Source of the DNA: Euprymna scolopes
Taxonomy: Eukaryota
Assembly: GCA_053919585.1 (NCBI GenBank)
Contig: CM132786.1
DNA: 64,000 nucleotides
Direction: 5' to 3' (one strand)
Below the pieces are notes generated by a model, which did no database searches, was not told the origin of the DNA, and saw nothing but the letters and a program-made list of their open reading frames with translations. The position numbers and the translations under genes were made by a program. Shown here piece after piece: positions 1,279 through 27,772 of the stretch (the stretch's first letter is position 1; every line of letters begins with the position of its first letter).

Positions 1279-1341
<63 letters not shown>

Positions 1342-2675
1342 GTTTTTAATTTTAAGCGTTCAAGCATTATAAAACATTAGATGTATCTCGTCTGTTAGAT
1401 ATATCTAATTATATCAATATTGGTACAGTAATACAAGACGATGTAATATTCATGAGTAAACATAAGGGTGAAACTAGATCAAATATAGTCTATATAATCA
1501 AATGGTAGAGGTATAGACATGTCTGCTGTAACTGTTGATCGTATGTTTAAAGTTGACCATTTGCTTTCTTAAATCAATCTTATCGGTTGCTTAAAAGTTT
1601 AGTATGAACGTTATTTTTATATAGTGTTTGATATAATAATAGCTTAAATATTTTGGTAAATGAGTGAAGAGTAAAGAGGCGATATATAAATAGTGTTAAT
1701 ACGGAAGCACATTTCCATCAGTGAGCGTATATTTGGTAAGGCAATTGTTGTACATTTTTAGATAAAACGATATTTAATCCAATCAGTATATCATAAAACA
1801 AATAACCGGAATAGAATTGTGCCTACACGCCTCCAGTGGTGTACAGTTTTATATTACGACGAACAAAATATGATTTTCAGATCACCCAGAGTAGTCCCTT
1901 TCTTCAAAAAAAATAAAATGGCAGGGAATATCTTTCGGCATGTATTGCTGTTAGATAATGGGAAATCATTATGATAATACAAGGTTATACAACTTTCTGA
2001 AATCGCGAATTCTTAACATTAGCGACTCATCTTTGTGGATTCAATTGTAAATTTGCATATGTGTTTTCATATGACATTGAAAACATGTTACAGAGTTTTT
2101 AAATAAATTCTGAATATATTTTTACTTGGCATGTGCAACGTCAGAATTCTGCTTGTATATAATACACACACGTATATTGGGGAGCCTTAATACCAATCAT
2201 TTCTGCGAGGTTCTCAACCCATTATAGAATCCATAATTTCTGAAAAATGCGATTGTTTCTTCTTCGTTACAAATTATTTCTGACAATTGCCCGTTTCTCA
2301 TATGCCATCAATCAATTTTCTTTTAATTCTGCTTTCGCTGACATTGCAGTCAACCCCATAAGCCGTCAACGTCACCTAGGACCGGTCTTATTATTTTTAA
2401 TTTATTTATTAAAATCCAGCTTTTTTTCTAGAATATTCAGACTCTTCTATATATACTCCCATTGATATTAAGTCTACTCGAACATATATTATTTGTTTGA
2501 CGTATTTTATAATCACATAATACAATAATACATATTTATTAATACAACTAACACAAATGGCAATGTAATATACTTCATACTATACGAAATTATTCGGTTT
2601 TCGAAAGATGGTATAATACATACATTGGATATATTGCCTGGACTGATTAATTCATTAAAAACAAATGAATCAATT

Positions 2676-4550: not shown

Positions 4551-4872
4551 AAATACCTACAGACACTAGTGTTTCATCCTTTCGGGAATCTTCAGTGCAG
4601 GGTGTCATGATTAACATCAGTCGAACGATTCGAACTCAGCAACACGAGACATCTCTGCTTGATTAGCAAAGACCGTATCTATTCGGCTGCCATTAACCGC
4701 GTGAACTAACGTTGAATTTAAACATTTTAACTTTAAATGTTCTTTACGTCAGTCAGACAGTGATCTAATCGCTATACGATGATCTATGCATAAGAGCTAA
4801 TTTGACCGACTTTGATTTAACTGAAAGTGCTCAACGATAAGAAACGAATTTCTTTAAGGGGCTGTCACAATA

Positions 4873-4876
<4 letters not shown>
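4551..4876 (-). mobile_element. tRNA-headed hammerhead repeat, family A (SINE/retrozyme-like monomer)
   Basis: Minus strand reads a tRNA-Ser-like head (GCAGCCGAATAGATACGG...long variable arm...GAGTTCGAATC, ~4700-4617) followed by a hammerhead at 4602-4555. Homologous copies lie at 53749-54108. It abuts an N gap. Confidence 0.75.
4555..4602 (-). ncRNA. Type I hammerhead ribozyme (family A)
   Basis: Minus strand: CCTGCA-CTGAAGA-TTCC CGAAA GGAT-GAAA-CACTAGTG-TC^-TGTAGG. Stem I CCTGCA/TGTAGG pairs (one G.U). Core CUGANGA and GAAA are intact, the cleavage triplet is GUC, and stem III is the palindrome CACTAGTG. The base of stem II is a non-canonical U.U. Confidence 0.75.
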
Positions 4877-4932
<56 letters not shown>

Positions 4933-4940
4933 TATATAAA
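4877..4940. repeat. (TA)n microsatellite separating families A and B
   Basis: Directly visible. Confidence 0.95.
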
Positions 4941-5224
4941 TGTCTGTCGATGACAACAAATATTTTAAACCCCCCTCTTTGGGTAGAACACTGTGGTAAG
5001 TAATCTTACCCGCTACTGAATTGTGTGAAAAATGCGACGCTCGCCCTTTGTTTATGAACAAACCGGTTATATCACTGTACAAATGATGGGCGGGTGGTTG
5101 TTTAAATAGACATTTGGCGAGATTATTTACGGTCACCGCTGCCGTGGGTCGATCGGTAGAAAAGCTGACTATCCACATCATTGTTCTAGGTTCAATCCTC
5201 GGCTTCGGAGAGGTGCTAGTCTAG

Positions 5225-5268
5225 CGGCACTGATGAGTTTTGATACAAAGAAACAGGACTGTATGTCG
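5225..5268 (+). ncRNA. Type I hammerhead ribozyme (family B, copy 1)
   Basis: CGGCA-CTGATGA-GTTTTGATACAAA-GAAA-CAGGACTG-TA^-TGTCG. Stem I CGGCA/TGTCG. The four-copy consensus stem II is GTTG-TGATA-CAAC. Stem III is CAGG(A/C)CTG, a perfect palindrome in copy 2. Confidence 0.8.
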
Positions 5269-5460
5269 ATGACTACAAACATTTTAAGGCTTCCTCTTTG
5301 GTTAGAGCACTGTCGTATATAATCTCACCCGCTCCTTAATTGGCTTAAAAAAATCGACGGTGGTTCTTTGTTCATAAACAAAGCGGTTAGAGCAGTGTGC
5401 AAGTGGTGGGGGTGATATTTCTTTAAATATATATTTGGTAAGATTATTTACGGCCGCCAC

Positions 5461-5532
5461 TCCCGTGCGTCGGTCGGTAGAACTACTGACTTTCAACGCG
5501 ATGGTTCTAGGTTCAATCCTAGGGTTGGGAGA
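5461..5532 (+). promoter_or_regulatory. tRNA-derived internal Pol III promoter (A box/B box) of family B monomer; equivalents at ~5140-5211 and ~5778-5850
   Basis: A-box-like TGCGTCGGTCGG/TGGGTCGAGCGG, B box GGTTCAATCC, anticodon-loop-like CT-TTC-AA, and ends TCCC...GGGA like tRNA-Glu. Stems are degraded, so this is not a functional tRNA. Confidence 0.7.
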
Positions 5533-5545
5533 GGTGCTAGTATAG

Positions 5546-5589
5546 GGAGGCTGATGAGTTGTGATACACCGAAACAGGCCTGTATGTCG
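5546..5589 (+). ncRNA. Hammerhead ribozyme (family B, copy 2; stem I 5' arm mutated)
   Basis: CTGATGA-GTTGTGATACACC-GAAA-CAGGCCTG-TA-TGTCG. Confidence 0.65.
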
Positions 5590-5862
5590 AATACTACATA
5601 TATTTTAAGCTCCCTCTTTGTGTAGAGCACTGTCGTATGTAATCTCACCCGCTACTTAATTGGCTGAAAATGTGATGCTCGCTCTTTCTTTATAAACAAA
5701 GCGGTTAGAGCACTGTGCAAGTGGTGGACGGATGTTAGTTAAAATATACATTTGGCGAGATTATTTAAGGTCGATGCTCCCGTGGGTCGAGCGGTAGAAC
5801 TGCTGACTTTCAACGCGATGGTTATAGGTTCAATCGTCGGCTTGCGCGAGGTGCTAGTATAG

Positions 5863-5905
5863 CGGCACTGATGAAATGTGATACAACGAAACAGGGTTTA
5901 GGTCG
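5863..5905 (+). ncRNA. Degenerate hammerhead (family B, copy 3)
   Basis: CGGCA-CTGATGA-AATGTGATACAAC-GAAA-CAGGGTT-TA-GGTCG. Stems II and III are damaged. Confidence 0.55.
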
Positions 5906-5990
5906 ATGACTACAAATATTTTAAGCTTCTATATTTGGGTAGAGCACTGTCATAAGTAATCTAACCCCCTACTTTGTTGGCTGAAAATTT

Positions 5991-6032
5991 CGACTGACGA
6001 GTTGTGATACAACGAATCAGGACTGTATGCCG
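5991..6032 (+). ncRNA. Degenerate hammerhead (family B, copy 4)
   Basis: CTGACGA-GTTGTGATACAAC-GAAT-CAGGACTG-TA-TGCCG. Perfect stem II, but GAAA is mutated to GAAT. Confidence 0.55.
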
Positions 6033-6039
6033 ATTACTA

Positions 6040-6114
<75 letters not shown>

Positions 6115-9654: not shown

Positions 9655-9968
9655 ATGGTGATGGCTTACATTCCGTTGCCTCCGTTCTGTCTCGAAAGAC
9701 AAAGGATACCCCCTGTAGGTGTAGCTGCGCGTGTAATTATGTAGCAAGAGTTGCGCAACCCCAATCACACCTCTCCTGAATCGACACTACTTGAGTTCAT
9801 TGGCAAGGAAATTCCAAAACCACTGGAAACAATGCAGCGATAAGGTGAGAGAATATATATCACCTAGAAGTCCCAAATGGCCGTCCATATGGTACTGGCT
9901 AGGCTCATCGTTGCTTAACTTTGGTTATCTGACAAGAACTGGTGTGTCAAAGGTGATTATGTCGTGTA
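9655..9968 (-). mobile_element. 5S rRNA-derived head (~9855-9968) plus ~200-bp GC-richer body: SINE3-like element or 5S pseudogene
   Basis: Minus strand ACGACATAATCACCTTTGACACACCAGTTCTTGTCAGATAACCAAAGTTAAGCAACGATGAGCCTAGCCAGTACCATATGGACGGCCATTTGGGACTTCTAGGTG aligns by eye along the length of metazoan 5S rRNA. It continues into non-5S sequence rather than an oligo-T terminator. Confidence 0.7.
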
Positions 9969-10070
9969 TATGATGGCTTACTTGAGAGTGAGTTAAAACA
10001 TAATAAACAGTTCACGGTTGGAATGTAAAGCAACAACGGCGCATCGGAACTTACATCAAAGCGGAGAACT

Positions 10071-16643: not shown

Positions 16644-18491
16644 ACATTCCACTGATGAATTTACTACTCTTAAAATTCAGTTGGGCGAATTAAATCGGAG
16701 GTTTTCAGCCATAAACACTAAATTTAGCGATTTTGTTAGGCAGAAAAATCATTTTGAAGCGGCAAAATTAATTAGGTCTAATTCCGACATTTATCGTACT
16801 CGCCCAGATAAAGGATAACAAAACGGATTATATCTTCAAAATCTTGGAAATTTTGGACGATAAAAATAAATTTCTCCGGTTGGATGATTTAAGCCACGAT
16901 GACACTTTTCGAATGGAAATAAAAATCCAGAACAGATTTCTTCAACTTTATAAAAGTGGGTTTATTTCTAAGGAGATTTACGATAGAATCCGACTCATTG
17001 GCTCTCAAAGGCCTAGAATGTACGTTTTACCCAAGGTTCATAAACCAAACATTCCTTTGCCACCCATTTTATCTATGTTGGGTTCTGCACAATACGAACT
17101 TGGGAAATGGTTAGTTGATCTTCTTAAACCTTTGCTTTCTTTTTATTCGGTCCATTGTATCTCTGATTCTTTTCAATCTGTGTCTCATATACACAAATTA
17201 TCTTTATCTAAGAATACCGAGTTCTTGGCTTCCTTTGACATTAATAGTCTTTTTACTAATATACCTTTGGATGAAACCATTGGTATTTGTGCTGACTATC
17301 TATATCGTGGCCCCTCAAAATCTCCACAATTTCCTGAACGAATTTTCGTTGAACTGATGGAACTTGCCACTAAATCAGTTTCCTTCAGGGTGAACAGTAT
17401 TATGTACCGGCAAATTGATGATATATCTATGGGTAACCCTCTTGGTCCTTCGCTAGCCAACATTTTCGTTGGATTTTTGGAAAACGAATTATTTTCTAAA
17501 TTACTAAACCAACATTCTATACACGCTACGTTGATGACACTGTTGCATGCTTTCCCTCACGGAGTGAAGCTGAACAGTTTCTTCGTCTTCTTTGTAACTT
17601 GCATCCATCGTTACAATTTACTATGGAGGTCGAGGACTGTGGCTCTCTTCCATTCCTCGATGTTCGTGTTTCTAAAGTTGGTTCTACGCTTGAGACCTCT
17701 GTATACAGAAAACCTACATTTACAGGGCTCTATCGTAATTGGTTTCCTTTGCCCCTCAGTCTAGAAAAAAAAACCTCATGAGCGCTCTTACACATCGTGC
17801 ACTCATGATTTGTTCACCAAACTGTCTTGACGCGGAACTTGGTGAAATCACAAATATTTTTCTCAGCAATGGATACCCCATAAATATAATAAGAACTACT
17901 ATTGGACGTAAAATTGCTACATTTAATAGTGTTAAACGTATTGGTCCATCACGTTGTCCCATTTATTTAAAATTACCATTGTTAGGTCCTGTTGGCCTTC
18001 ATATTGTTAAAAGGATTTCTTCTGCTACTCAACGTTGTTTTACAGCTACTATGCTTAGAGTAGTTTACACAACTCGAACCTTTTTCTCTTCTTTTCATAA
18101 AGATATTTTGCCAACCATTCAAAAGAATTCTGTTGTTTATAAATTTGTTTGTCAGTGTGGAGCTGACTACATTGACAATACATCCCAAAGATTAGAAATT
18201 AAATATCCCAACACATCCCTCGGGATATTCGATTACACCAGGTTTCGGGAACATCTGGACACTCCCAAGCTCATGAGTCCGCCATCGGTAATCACCTGAT
18301 TAGTATAAATAGGTGTTCTGACCAATATTCCGATGGTTGGTTTTCTGTTTTATACAGTGCTAGGTCGAACTATCATCTCAATATCATTGAGGCGTTAGTC
18401 ATTAATAACTCTCGACTTAGCCTGTGTAGACAAAAGATTTTGAAACATCAGTTGGAAATATTTACTGATTTAAAACCACCTGACCAGTGAG

Positions 18492-25769: not shown

Positions 25770-27098
25770 TATTTTGTTTTCCATATTTTGCGATATTATG
25801 TATTAACATTTAATTTTTGCGTATTATATATTAACATTTATTTTCTGGGATATTATATATTAAAATATTTTTTTTTGATATTATATACTAACATTTACTT
25901 TTTGCGATATGGTATATAACCATTTAATTTTTGCGATATTATATATACACATTTAATGTTTGCAACATTATATATAACCATTTAATTTTTTGCGATATTA
26001 TATATTAATATTTAATTTCTGCGACATTATATATTAACATTTACATTTGGCGATATTATATATAACCATTTAATTTTTGCGATATTATATATAATCATTT
26101 AATTTTTGCGATATTATATATAATCATTTAATTTTTGCGATATTACATAAAAGCATTTCATTTTTGCGATATTATATAAAAACATTTCATTTTTGCGATA
26201 TTATGTATTAATATTTATTTTTAAATATTATATATTAGCATTTAATTTTTGCGATATTATATATTAACATTTATTTTTTGCGATATTATATATTAACATT
26301 TAATTTTTTGCGATATTATATATTAATATTTAATTTCTGCGACATTATATATTAACATTTAATTTTTGCGATATTATATATACTCATTTAATTTTTGCGA
26401 TATTATATATAATCATTTAATTTTTGCGATATTATATATAATCATTTAATTTTTGCGATATTACATATAAGCATTTCATTTTTGCGATATTATATAAAAA
26501 CATTTCATTTTTGCGATATTATGTATTAATATTTATTTTTAAATATTATATATTAGCATTTAATTTTTGCGATATTATATATTAACATTTATTTTTTGCG
26601 ATAATATAAATTAACATTTATTTTTTTCGATATTATATATTAATACTTATTGTTTCGATATTATATATTCATATTAAATTTTTCGATATTATATATTATC
26701 ATTACATGTTTTCGATATTATATATTCGCATTTAGTGTTTGCGATATTATATATTAACATTTATTTTTTGTGATATTATATATTTACATTTAGTGTTTGC
26801 GATATTATATAATAAGATTTAATTTTTGCTATATTATATATTATTTACATTGTATTTTTGCGATATTATATATTAATATTACATTTTTGCGATATTATAT
26901 ATTATATACCTTTAATTTTTGCGATACTATATATTAATATATAATTTTTTCGATATTATATATAATCGTTTAATTTTTGCGATATTATATATTAACATTT
27001 ATTTTTTTTCGATATTATATATTAACATTTAATTTTTGCGATATTATATATTAGCATGCACTGTTTGCGATATTATATATTAACATTTAATTTATTCG

Positions 27099-27154
<56 letters not shown>

Positions 27155-27694
27155 ATTTCATTTTTGAGATATTATATATTAACATTTTATTTGGGGGATA
27201 TTATATATTATTTAGATTGAATTTATCCGATATCATATATACACATTTCATTTTTTCGATATTATATATTACGATTTACATTTTACGATATTATATGTTA
27301 TGTACATTTGGTTTTTGCGATATTATATATTACTATTAAATTTTTGCGATATTATATATAATCATTTAATTTTAGCAGTATTATATATTAACATTTAATT
27401 TTTTCGCTATTATATATTAACATTTAATTTTTGCGATATAATATATAATCATTTTATTAGTTTGATATTATATATTTAGATGCAGTGGTGCGATATTATA
27501 TATTCAGACTTGGTTTTTTGATATTATATATAGACATATAATTTTGTCGATATTATATATTAACATTAAATTTTTGCGATATTATATATAGTCATGTATT
27601 TTTTTCGATATTATCTATAAACATTTAATTTTTGCGATATAATATATTAACATTTAGTGTTTGTGATATTATATATTAACATTGAATTTTTCGA
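25770..27694. repeat. ~29-bp AT-rich minisatellite, ~60+ copies
   Basis: Consensus GCGATATTATATATTAACATTTAATTTTT, interrupted by (TA)n at ~27100-27150. Confidence 0.95.
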
Positions 27695-27699
27695 CGAAT

Positions 27700-27772
27700 A
27701 TTGGCTGAAGAGAGCTTGATAAGGATACCTTAAACGGGCCTTATTATCGGGCTTGAAACCGATGGTACCAAT
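27700..27772 (+). ncRNA. Type I hammerhead ribozyme with long stem II
   Basis: ATTGG-CTGAAGA-GAGCTTGATAA GG...CC TTA TTATCGGGCTT-GAAA-CC GAT GG-TA^-CCAAT. Stem I ATTGG/CCAAT is perfect, the 11-bp stem II has G.U pairs, stem III is short, and the triplet is GUA. Confidence 0.85.

What the first reader, a model, noticed from the sequence alone, without database searches (positions are those of the whole stretch)
4941..6044. Tandem tRNA-promoter + hammerhead ribozyme array: candidate new retrozyme/SINE family (family B)
Seen: head-to-tail ~319-bp monomers, each ordered spacer - TATA-like AAATATATATTTGG ~30 nt upstream - tRNA-Glu-like A/B-box head - ~20 nt - type I hammerhead (consensus CGGCA CTGATGA GTTG-TGATA-CAAC GAAA CAGGCCTG TA^TGTCG). 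No single copy is perfect, but the mutations differ between copies, so the consensus is an intact ribozyme. Known: tandem 150-400-nt repeats with type I hammerheads are the hallmark of metazoan non-LTR retrozymes (newt satellite 2, schistosome SMalpha, the latter also tRNA-promoter-bearing). These are transcribed, self-cleaved into monomers, can circularise, and are thought to borrow PLE RT. Inference: this is a self-transcribing, self-processing, non-coding retroelement, probably undescribed in this lineage, that may produce ~319-nt linear or circular RNAs.
Basis: partly seen in the sequence, partly recalled or inferred. Interest (0 to 1): 0.9.

Follow-up and report, generated by a model that had tools for sequence, protein, structure and literature searches.

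The report
Decayed hammerhead-ribozyme retroelement array
This is an old, mutated 3.3-unit insertion of a roughly 20,000-copy mobile element of a large mollusc genome that carries a self-cutting hammerhead RNA motif next to a tRNA-like promoter; it is a new example of a known kind of element, and this copy is dead.

Summary
Window 4941-6044 is a 3.3-unit head-to-tail array (period 317, 80% match) lying between two (TA)n microsatellites. Each unit has a TATA-like box, a tRNA-like A/B-box segment and a type I hammerhead (HHR), and every HHR here is mutated.

Genome-wide the family is dispersed, not a satellite. The HHR core occurs 20,300 times within 2 mismatches, and 2,378 full 44-nt HHRs are perfect.

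In 58 sampled insertions the 3' end is fixed about 12-19 nt past the cleavage site. The 5' end varies from 0.2 to 2.4 units. 81% abut (TA)n, against a 7% background. These are Penelope-like (PLE) footprints, and intact (TA)n-associated PLEs exist in this genome.

A sister family with 16,214 copies differs in the HHR by two compensatory pairs and two loop bases only, which argues that the fold is selected.

Not shown: Pol III transcription, cleavage, or RNA circles. PolyA RNA-seq shows only low, two-stranded, read-through signal. Rfam and ARAGORN call neither the HHR nor the tRNA.

The closest known elements are schistosome Sm-alpha and metazoan retrozymes, so this is a new member of a known kind. 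The scan has flagged such elements 36 times in this genome.

The parts
4877..4938 (.). (TA)31 microsatellite on the 5' side of the array. The family A element sits on its other side, on the minus strand.
   Evidence: TRF; sequence
4941..6047 (+). The whole insertion: three full units plus one internally deleted unit, ending in the family's standard tail, which runs into (AT)n.
   Evidence: TRF; BLAST to natural genomic units
4945..5263 (+). Unit 1, measured cleavage site to cleavage site (319 nt); 89% identical to the subfamily majority.
5264..5584 (+). Unit 2 (321 nt); 87% identical to the subfamily majority.
5585..5900 (+). Unit 3 (316 nt); 90% identical to the subfamily majority.
5901..6027 (+). 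Unit 4. Unit positions 1-95 are joined directly to the HHR (from about position 286), so the tRNA-like part is deleted.
   Evidence: BLAST; sequence
5225..5268 (+). HHR 1. Core and helix I are intact. Helix II has two broken pairs (G to T and C to A).
   Evidence: sequence; fold
5546..5589 (+). HHR 2. The helix I 5' strand is mutated (GGAGG in place of CGGCA) and one helix II pair is broken. This is the only copy with the palindromic stem III CAGGCCTG.
   Evidence: sequence
5863..5905 (+). HHR 3. G10.1 is mutated, and helix III and the GUA cleavage triplet are destroyed.
   Evidence: sequence
5994..6032 (+). HHR 4. It has CTGACGA and good helices II and III, but GAAT replaces GAAA, and the helix I 5' strand is missing because of the deletion.
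   Evidence: sequence
5139..5212 (+). tRNA-like segment of unit 1 (A-box-like, B-box GGTTCAATCC, acceptor-like ends).
   Evidence: sequence; family majority; not called by ARAGORN or Rfam
5461..5533 (+). tRNA-like segment of unit 2.
   Evidence: same as for unit 1
5778..5850 (+). tRNA-like segment of unit 3.
   Evidence: same as for unit 1
5100..5116 (+). TATA-like box about 30 nt upstream of the tRNA-like start. The matching boxes of units 2 and 3 lie at about 5421-5437 and 5738-5754. The box is identical in the two subfamily majorities.
5282..5285 (+). T4 run 19 nt after the cleavage site; it could act as a Pol III terminator. Others lie at 4963-4966, 5603-5606 and 5919-5922. It is the only T4 run in a natural unit.
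6044..6114 (.). (AT)35 microsatellite into which the 3' tail runs.
   Evidence: TRF
4551..4876 (-). Neighbouring element of another family (A) in the same (TA)n site. It has the same layout (B-box-like, then HHR, then tail) and is cut off by the N gap.
   Evidence: sequence; 19,344 genomic HHR matches

Best explanation
The array is one old, multi-unit insertion of a high-copy, non-coding retroelement: a hybrid of a SINE and a retrozyme. It has been decaying neutrally ever since. The family unit is about 317 nt. Counted from the ribozyme cleavage site, its order is: a 19-nt tail ending in AAATAT and a T4 run; a conserved body; a TATA-like box; a tRNA-derived A/B-box segment; a roughly 10-nt linker; and a type I hammerhead.

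Shown: the element is dispersed in about 20,000 copies. The HHR consensus is canonical and its helices co-vary with those of a sister family. Copies have a fixed 3' end, a variable 5' end and partial upstream units. They sit in (TA)n, less often in (CA)n or (GA)n, with microhomology at the junctions.

Inferred: reverse transcription is primed from a nicked microsatellite on the AU-rich tail of an RNA that runs across the cleavage site. That RNA would be either an uncleaved multimer or a religated circle. Copying then continues for less or more than one unit, which gives the 0.2- to 2.4-unit copies and arrays such as this one. The enzyme is probably that of a Penelope-like element that targets (TA)n.

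Also inferred: the tRNA-like segment together with the upstream TATA-like box drives Pol III transcription. Only copies that carry a promoter upstream of a full unit (dimers or arrays) can make a complete monomer between two ribozymes. The short, near-palindromic helix III suggests that cleavage works best when two ribozymes pair, as in multimers.
For: Array and its decay. Copy number: 20,300 HHR cores within 2 mismatches and 0 in the reversed control; 2,378 perfect 44-nt HHRs.

Insertion anatomy in 58 copies: the 3' end lies 12-19 nt past the cleavage site, and the 5' ends are spread over the unit. (TA)>=4 follows the tail in 47 of 58 copies and precedes the 5' boundary in 31 of 58, against a background of 7.3%. 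Junctions with (CA)n fall at ACA, which indicates microhomology.

No PLE coding sequence lies within 1.5 kb of the 57 family loci.

The canonical fold in natural copies has helix I of 5 bp, helix II of 5 bp and helix III of 3 bp, and 54 of 90 HHR sites in the loci pass a strict type I descriptor.

Selection on the fold: the two subfamily majorities are 41/42 identical in the HHR but only 79% identical in body positions 101-189. The sister family C (16,214 copies; sequence) differs from family B at six HHR positions. Four of these form two compensatory pairs: G-C to C-G in helix I and U-A to C-G in helix II. The other two are loop bases.

The promoter-like parts (TATA-like box, B box, acceptor 3' strand) are identical between the subfamilies.

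PLE partners exist: 14,709 GIY-YIG candidates and open frames of up to 870 aa; the sampled reading frame (the last 611 aa lie inside the locus) carries RVT_1 followed by a C-terminal GIY-YIG domain, and its 3' ends run into (TA)n.

Literature: a (TA)n bias, pseudo-LTRs and tails are described for PLEs (PMC8557442); animal retrozymes are proposed to be non-autonomous PLEs (bioRxiv 10.64898/2026.07.22.740005).
Against: Rfam Hammerhead_1 never matched. This holds even for perfect copies at E<=1, or E<=10 on 481 nt. The only hit was Hammerhead_3 at 19.9 bits, E=0.12.

The canonical fold scores -3.9 kcal/mol against an alternative MFE of -10.7, and the z-scores are about 0.

No copy is called a tRNA by ARAGORN at default settings (0 of 57 loci) or by Rfam. 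ARAGORN finds a cloverleaf only at -ps80.

PolyA RNA-seq gave a few hundred reads per run, on both strands. About 70% of what was laid runs on into unlike flanks, and no ends pile up at the cleavage site. That pattern looks like passive read-through transcription.

No HHR core was found in six sampled PLE copies: it was sought over about 750 nt of 3' UTR in the main family and over the remaining downstream locus sequence in the others. No tail similarity to family B was seen in the main family or in the window's PLE remnant.

The 5' ends do not pile up at the predicted Pol III start. The T4 run just after the ribozyme should also stop Pol III before the body is transcribed.
Confidence: 0.72

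Rival explanations
1. It is an ordinary tRNA-derived SINE. The hammerhead-shaped 3' module is conserved only as the recognition site for the partner reverse transcriptase, or as a relic of a PLE terminal repeat. It does not cleave in vivo, and no circular RNA is involved.
For: No ends pile up at the cleavage site in RNA-seq. The canonical fold is not thermodynamically favoured. Every integrated copy contains sequence from both sides of the cleavage site, so the copied RNA was uncut there. Metazoan PLE hammerheads cleave poorly in vitro (PMC4209133).
Against: The compensatory changes in helices I and II between families B and C keep the ribozyme fold, not merely a sequence. All 11 core nucleotides and the GUA triplet are invariant across families A, B, C and the orphan, while their helices differ. 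The only RNA data available, polyA libraries, cannot see cleaved or circular non-polyadenylated RNA.
Confidence: 0.15
2. It is a retrozyme transcribed passively, by host read-through or Pol II. The tRNA-like segment is a fossil of the element's origin and not a working Pol III promoter.
For: Reads come from both strands and about 70% of what was laid continues into flanking sequence. The tRNA-like region is the second least conserved part between subfamilies, at 85%, and fails the tRNA detectors. The 5' ends of copies do not cluster at the predicted start. The T4 run lies directly after the ribozyme.
Against: The B box, the acceptor 3' strand and the TATA-like box 30 nt upstream are identical between subfamilies that otherwise differ by 20%. 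Unrelated families (A, and those noted elsewhere in the scan) also place a B-box-like motif shortly upstream of their HHR. Sm-alpha offers a precedent (PMC2770079).
Confidence: 0.2
3. It is the terminal repeat (pLTR) of an autonomous Penelope-like element, seen here without its coding part.
For: It shows partial tandem structure, a tail and a (TA)n target, as PLEs do (PMC8557442).
Against: No RT/EN coding sequence lies within 1.5 kb of any of the 57 loci. The sampled PLE 3' regions contain neither this HHR nor any CTGANGA...GAAA core. The 317-nt unit has no long open frame: at most 60 aa stop-free in a trimer.
Confidence: 0.04
4. It is a plain minisatellite whose hammerhead and tRNA resemblances are chance.
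For: The window copies are all defective, and Rfam and ARAGORN report nothing.
Against: There are 20,300 dispersed copies with a fixed 3' end and none in the reversed control. 2,378 HHRs are perfect. The helices co-vary with those of family C. The differences between array units are mostly private, so there has been no homogenisation.
Confidence: 0.02

Closest known systems
Sm-alpha / Sj-alpha SINE-like retroposons of schistosomes (Ferbeyre et al. 1998; Laha et al. 2000, as cited in PMC2770079 and PMC8490949)
   Same: A unit of about 335 bp, tRNA-derived Pol III promoter boxes and a type I hammerhead in one short non-coding unit. There are more than 10,000 copies, found both dispersed and in tandem.
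   Different: The host is in a different phylum (a mollusc rather than a flatworm). In Sm-alpha the tRNA part is recognised as tRNA-Gln by tRNAscan (PMC2770079), whereas here no detector calls a tRNA. The strong (TA)n targeting with PLE-style variable 5' partial units has not, to my knowledge, been described for Sm-alpha.
Metazoan non-LTR retrozymes (Cervera and de la Pena 2020, PMC7229834)
   Same: Non-coding units of 150-400 nt with a type I HHR, which occur as tandem copies. They are proposed to give unit-length circular RNA after double self-cleavage and ligation by a tRNA ligase, and to be mobilised by PLE enzymes. A mollusc (mussel) carries about 5,000 such copies.
   Different: Most copies here are solitary insertions of 0.2-2.4 units rather than arrays. 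The unit carries its own tRNA-like promoter and TATA-like box; tRNA appears in that paper only in connection with tRNA ligases and tRNA processing, not as a promoter. GC content, at 45.7%, sits at the upper edge of the stated <45%. Expression as circles was not tested here.
Pseudo-LTRs and min-HHRs of Penelope-like elements (PMC4209133, PMC8557442)
   Same: The HHR lies near the 3' end. Other shared features are partial head-to-tail tandems with a variably truncated upstream copy, a short tail beyond the repeat, insertion into (TA)n, and a short helix III that suggests action as a dimer.
   Different: The unit is not attached to an RT/EN gene. The sampled (TA)n-associated PLEs of this genome show no HHR core in their 3' regions. 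The HHR here has all three helices, so it is not a min-HHR.
Ceph-SINEs and SepiaSINE2 of squids and cuttlefish (Akasaki et al. 2010, as cited in PMC5786205 and PMC4824008)
   Same: They are tRNA-related short retroposons of cephalopods.
   Different: Those have the classical order of tRNA head at the 5' end, then a CORE/RTE-derived body, then a LINE-type tail. The papers read here report no ribozyme in them. The diagnostic RTE-like 23-mer quoted in PMC5786205 is absent from this unit, which shares only an 8-mer with it.

Membership tests
Hammerhead ribozyme, type I | Conserved core CUGANGA ... GAAA and a cleavable NUH triplet | tested here: met
   Met at family level: 2,378 perfect 44-nt copies with CUGAUGA, GAAA and GUA. 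Three of the four window copies (units 1, 2 and 4) keep CUGANGA and the GUA triplet, but unit 4 reads GAAT instead of GAAA and unit 3 has lost the triplet. All four are damaged in the core or in a helix.
Hammerhead ribozyme, type I | Three helices around the core with helix I open (type I topology) | tested here: met
   Natural copies have helix I of 5 bp (plus an internal loop and 4 further bp by inspection), helix II of 5 bp and helix III of 3 bp. 54 of 90 family sites in the 57 loci pass a strict descriptor.
Hammerhead ribozyme, type I | Helices supported by covariation | tested here: met
   Family B and family C (16,214 copies) differ at six positions. Four of them form two compensatory pairs, in helices I and II; the other two are in loops. 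Family A and the orphan HHR keep the core with different helices. This was done by inspection. No R-scape-type statistic was run.
Hammerhead ribozyme, type I | Match to the Rfam covariance model RF00163 at its gathering score | tested here: not met
   No Hammerhead_1 hit in the window or on perfect natural copies. The best clan hit was Hammerhead_3 at 19.9 bits against a gathering score of 48.5.
Hammerhead ribozyme, type I | Mg2+-dependent self-cleavage at the predicted site | not testable with these tools
   PolyA RNA-seq shows no pile-up of ends at the site, but such libraries are uninformative for cleaved, non-polyadenylated RNA.
Metazoan non-LTR retrozyme | Non-coding tandem units of about 150-400 nt, each with a type I HHR | tested here: met
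   The window holds a 3.3-unit array. Some loci hold 2-2.4-unit copies, and pairs of perfect HHRs occur 317-328 nt apart. No long ORF is present. Most copies, however, are shorter than 1.5 units.
Metazoan non-LTR retrozyme | Expressed as unit-length circular RNA | tested here: inconclusive
   Only polyA libraries and assembled contigs were available. Reads do cross the cleavage site into the next unit, and one contig shows a 316-nt back-joint. Genomic tandems explain both observations.
tRNA-derived SINE | A recognisable tRNA-derived head with A and B boxes | tested here: inconclusive
   A B box, an A-box-like motif, a 6/7-bp acceptor stem and a T arm are visible in the majority sequence. ARAGORN at default settings finds nothing in 57 loci, Rfam's tRNA model finds nothing at E<=10, and ARAGORN finds a cloverleaf only at -ps80.
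tRNA-derived SINE | The head lies at the 5' end of the integrated copy and 5' ends cluster at the Pol III start | tested here: not met
   The 5' ends are spread over the whole unit, with clusters at unit positions 273-284 and around the cleavage site, not at about 190.
tRNA-derived SINE | A 3' tail shared with a partner LINE, and target-site duplications | not tested
   No LINE library was available. Duplications cannot be read because the targets are microsatellites.
Penelope-like element terminal repeat | The repeat flanks an RT plus GIY-YIG gene | tested here: not met
   tblastn with the genome's PLE protein finds nothing within 1.5 kb of the 57 family loci.

The most novel reading that the evidence does not exclude
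Families A, B, C and others would together form a distinct class of Pol III-promoted ribozyme SINEs. In this reading they are the overlooked short retroposons of decapodiform cephalopods, whose genomes are reported to have almost no SINEs. They would be copied from circular or multimeric RNA by (TA)n-specific Penelope-like enzymes that lack a ribozyme of their own. Their insertions would seed or extend much of the genome's abundant (TA)n microsatellite.
Probability: 0.25. Interest if true: 0.7.

Novelty: new member of a known kind. Interest (0 to 1): 0.48.

Why it matters
Three families alone give more than 55,000 hammerhead motifs in one mollusc genome. The standard detectors, Rfam and ARAGORN, see none of those tested here. 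A published cephalopod annotation lists only 235 hammerheads (PMC6962438), and a cuttlefish genome paper reports almost no SINEs and 40% uncharacterised repeats (PMC13218726). If the elements are transcribed and processed as their anatomy suggests, they could be a large natural source of small circular or tRNA-like RNAs. They would also offer a clean system for asking how Penelope-type enzymes choose templates and microsatellite targets. The locus in this window is itself a dead copy with no expected activity.

Tried and rejected
- **Rfam searches.** I ran gathering and E-value scans on the window, on perfect natural copies and on a 481-nt stretch. No Hammerhead_1 or tRNA hit appeared.
- **ARAGORN.** Nothing in the window or in the 57 loci.
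- **Thermodynamic folding of HHR domains and whole units, linear and circular.** The canonical fold is not the MFE, and z-scores run from about 0 to -1.2. Folding therefore neither supports nor refutes the ribozyme.
- **RNA-seq on a natural 1.3-unit copy.** The signal was low, came from both strands and mostly ran into flanking sequence. There was no cleavage signature.
- **Search for the autonomous partner.** PLEs are abundant and intact. The sampled ones have neither this HHR nor any HHR core in their 3' regions.
- **Ferbeyre et al. 1998.** The paper is not held in the library, so Sm-alpha was compared only through later papers.
- **Internal repeats of the unit.** Only short motifs turned up, such as GGTTAGAGCACTGT twice 85 nt apart, plus a 16-nt long-range complementarity. 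I did not pursue these.
- **Ceph-SINE identity.** Rejected on architecture and on the absence of the quoted RTE-like motif.
Full report
**1. What is in the window**

Tandem Repeats Finder reports 4941-5988 as 3.3 copies of a 317-bp unit at 80% match. (TA)31 lies at 4877-4938 and (AT)35 at 6044-6114. Reading the sequence and locating motifs by script gives four hammerhead cores: CTGANGA at 5230, 5551, 5868 and 5994. B-box-like GGTTCAA sits at 5189, 5510 and 5827. A TATA-like box lies about 30 nt upstream of each tRNA-like segment. A T4 run lies 19 nt after each cleavage site. Unit 4 jumps from unit position ~95 straight to the ribozyme, so it has lost its tRNA-like part.

Every ribozyme here is damaged, in helix I, II or III or in the core. 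Rfam finds no hammerhead even at E<=10, and ARAGORN finds no tRNA.

Against the majority of the nearest subfamily, the three full units are 87-90% identical. They carry 31, 35 and 28 private differences, with only 8 shared by two units and 1 shared by all three. The array was therefore formed at one time from a near-consensus source and has decayed without homogenisation. It is not a maintained satellite.

**2. The family**

The window lies in a 5.9-Gb assembly. RNA runs holding the sequence are labelled with one coded organism and with mollusc metagenomes. The size and chromosome number fit a decapodiform cephalopod, but that is inference.

- The 39-nt ribozyme core occurs 20,300 times within two mismatches, with no hit in the reversed control.
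- The full 44-nt ribozyme, including both strands of helix I, is perfect 2,378 times.
- Two subfamilies about 80% identical were sampled, from 29 loci found with a window unit and 30 found with the perfect core.

In 58 insertions the 3' end is fixed: the ribozyme, the cleavage site, then 12-19 nt of tail that runs into a microsatellite. The 5' end falls anywhere in the unit, so copies span 0.2 to 2.4 units, often as a full unit preceded by a partial one.

(TA)>=4 follows the tail in 47 of 58 copies and precedes the 5' boundary in 31 of 58, against 7.3% of random flank windows. Where the target is (CA)n, the junction falls at ACA within the tail. This indicates priming by microhomology.

No RT/EN coding sequence lies within 1.5 kb of any locus. 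A trimer of a natural unit has no stop-free stretch above 60 aa.

**3. Is the ribozyme real?**

In natural copies the canonical fold has helix I of 5 bp, helix II of 5 bp and helix III of 3 bp. By inspection, helix I continues as an internal loop and four more pairs, AGUC/GACU. 54 of 90 family sites in the loci pass a strict type I descriptor.

Between the two subfamily majorities the ribozyme is 41/42 identical, while body positions 101-189 are 79% identical.

The strongest evidence is comparative. A sister family C was found by chance in the flanks. It has a 284-bp spacing and 16,214 copies. Its ribozyme differs from family B's at six positions. Four of these form two compensatory pairs: G-C to C-G in helix I and U-A to C-G in helix II. 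The other two are in loops, and none touches the core. Family A (next to the array on the minus strand, 19,344 copies) and the orphan ribozyme at 27705-27767 keep the same core with entirely different helices.

Against this:
- The Rfam type I model never matched, even on perfect copies.
- The canonical fold scores -3.9 kcal/mol against an alternative at -10.7.
- Shuffled controls fold equally well.

Short helices I and III are usual for metazoan type I hammerheads, which are thought to act as dimers (PMC4209133). Here the genome-wide stem III, CAGGACUG, is only near-palindromic. The perfect palindrome is a mutation of unit 2.

**4. The tRNA-like part**

The majority sequences show an acceptor stem of 6/7 pairs, an A-box-like motif, a B box and T arm, and GTC (Asp-like) at the anticodon-equivalent site. 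The TTC read as Glu is specific to this array. The D and anticodon arms are poor. ARAGORN finds a cloverleaf only at a relaxed threshold, finds nothing at default in 57 loci, and Rfam's tRNA model finds nothing.

Three parts are identical between subfamilies that otherwise differ by 20%: the B box, the acceptor 3' strand, and the TATA-like box about 30 nt upstream. That favours a working Pol III promoter.

The only T4 run of the unit lies at positions 21-24, just after the ribozyme. A Pol III transcript would therefore be about 150 nt (tRNA-like part, ribozyme, tail) unless termination leaks.

**5. RNA evidence**

Three polyA RNA-seq runs and one set of contigs were laid on a natural 1.3-unit copy with flanks.
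- A few hundred reads per run matched, on both strands.
- About 70% of what was laid continued into unrelated sequence.
- Depth was highest over the ribozyme.
- No pile-up of ends appeared at the cleavage site.
- Reads crossing the site continued either into (TA)n or into the next unit.

This is what passive transcription of dispersed copies gives. It says nothing about non-polyadenylated, cleaved or circular RNA.

**6. The likely enzyme**

The genome holds 14,709 GIY-YIG candidates with open frames of up to 870 aa. In the sampled copy, only the last 611 aa of the frame lie inside the locus. That frame carries RVT_1 followed by a C-terminal GIY-YIG domain, which is a canonical endonuclease-positive Penelope-like element. 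Its 3' end runs into (TA)n, as does a second PLE remnant in the window at 16.8-18.5 kb.

A (TA)n bias, partial tandems and short tails are described for PLEs (PMC8557442). Animal retrozymes have been proposed to be non-autonomous PLEs (bioRxiv 10.64898/2026.07.22.740005).

No hammerhead core was found in six sampled PLE copies. It was sought over about 750 nt of 3' UTR in the main family and over the remaining downstream locus sequence in the others. No tail similarity to family B was seen in the main family or in the window's remnant. The partner therefore remains unidentified. Further genome fetches were not possible.

**7. Mechanism**

Shown: a dispersed, non-coding, microsatellite-associated retroelement with a selected hammerhead fold and conserved promoter-like boxes.

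Inferred:
- A microsatellite nick primes reverse transcription on the AU-rich tail of an RNA that spans the cleavage site.
- That RNA is either an uncleaved multimer or a religated circle. Copying stops after a variable distance, which explains the sub-unit copies, the 1.x-unit copies and arrays like this one.
- Only copies with a promoter upstream of a complete unit can yield a full monomer bounded by two ribozymes.
- Whether the template is a circle, whether Pol III drives it, and whether cleavage occurs are all untested.

**8. Comparison and verdict**

The architecture matches schistosome Sm-alpha/Sj-alpha: a tRNA-derived SINE-like unit of about 335 bp with a type I hammerhead and more than 10,000 copies (PMC2770079, PMC8490949). 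It also matches metazoan retrozymes (PMC7229834).

It is not a Ceph-SINE (PMC5786205) and not a PLE terminal repeat.

In the held literature, cephalopod hammerheads appear only as 235 Rfam hits in the giant squid (PMC6962438). No paper linking retrozymes or such elements to cephalopods was found.

This is a new member of a known kind. The family is of moderate interest. This particular copy is a fossil.

The scan's first readers have noted tRNA-plus-hammerhead elements 36 times in this genome. Those notes are leads only. Three of their readings were checked here: the Asp-like head, the multi-family system, and the coincidence of the array ends with the cleavage site and the T4 run. All three hold.

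Noticed in passing
window 4551-4876 (minus strand): A family A element with the same layout (B-box-like GAGTTCGAATC, then about 35 nt, then an HHR with CUGAAGA, U.U at the base of helix II and palindromic stem III ACACUAGUGU, cleaving after GUC). It is inserted head-to-head with the array in the same (TA)n site and is cut off by the N gap. Its HHR occurs 19,344 times within 2 mismatches.
   Followed up: partly
L009 about 1295-1345 (minus strand); L051 1925-2010; genome-wide: A sister family C with a unit spacing of 284-285 bp and 16,214 HHR matches. Many perfect copies stand in tandem. Its HHR differs from family B's by two compensatory pairs and two loop bases. The L051 copy has a deletion inside helix II.
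   Followed up: partly
window 27705-27767 (+): A well-formed type I HHR: helix I of 6 bp, helix II of 11 bp, helix III of 3 bp, cleaving after GUA. It lies at the end of the 1.9-kb 29/318-bp minisatellite (25786-27691) and is followed by (CT)n(TA)n. It is the only site in the window that passes the strict descriptor.
   Followed up: partly
L014 ~2450, L019 ~1224, L021 ~421 and ~1390, L042 ~1288, L030 ~1306: Two further HHR families turned up by chance in about 170 kb of flanks. One has helix I AAGC/GCUU and a long stem III and appeared five times. The other has an 8-bp helix I. HHR-bearing repeats are therefore very dense in this genome.
   Followed up: no
window 16823-18490 (+) and 18553 onward: A remnant of a Penelope-like RT, about 30% identical to the genome's main PLE, with a weak RVT_1 hit. 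Its 3' end ...CCAGTGAGAAT runs into (TA)n. The reverse complement of that end sits on the other side of the microsatellite, which is the inverted arrangement typical of PLEs.
   Followed up: partly
window 9852-9969 (minus strand); L010 1817-1943: 5S rRNA-like sequences at 44.5 and 41.1 bits, both above the Rfam gathering score. They are probably 5S-derived SINE copies. The one in L010 abuts a family B insertion at a short (TA)n.
   Followed up: no
whole window: About 30 (TA)n/(AT)n microsatellites of 40-140 bp lie in 64 kb. Family A, family B and the PLE remnant in this window all end in them, which suggests a link between these retroelements and the microsatellite load.
   Followed up: no
L051 1535-1851 and window 5314-5329 / 5437-5452: A 16-nt stretch in the body is 88% complementary to a stretch just upstream of the tRNA-like part, 107 nt away. 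GGTTAGAGCACTGT occurs twice, 85 nt apart, inside the unit. Body positions 25-100 are as conserved between subfamilies (97%) as the ribozyme, and this is unexplained.
   Followed up: no
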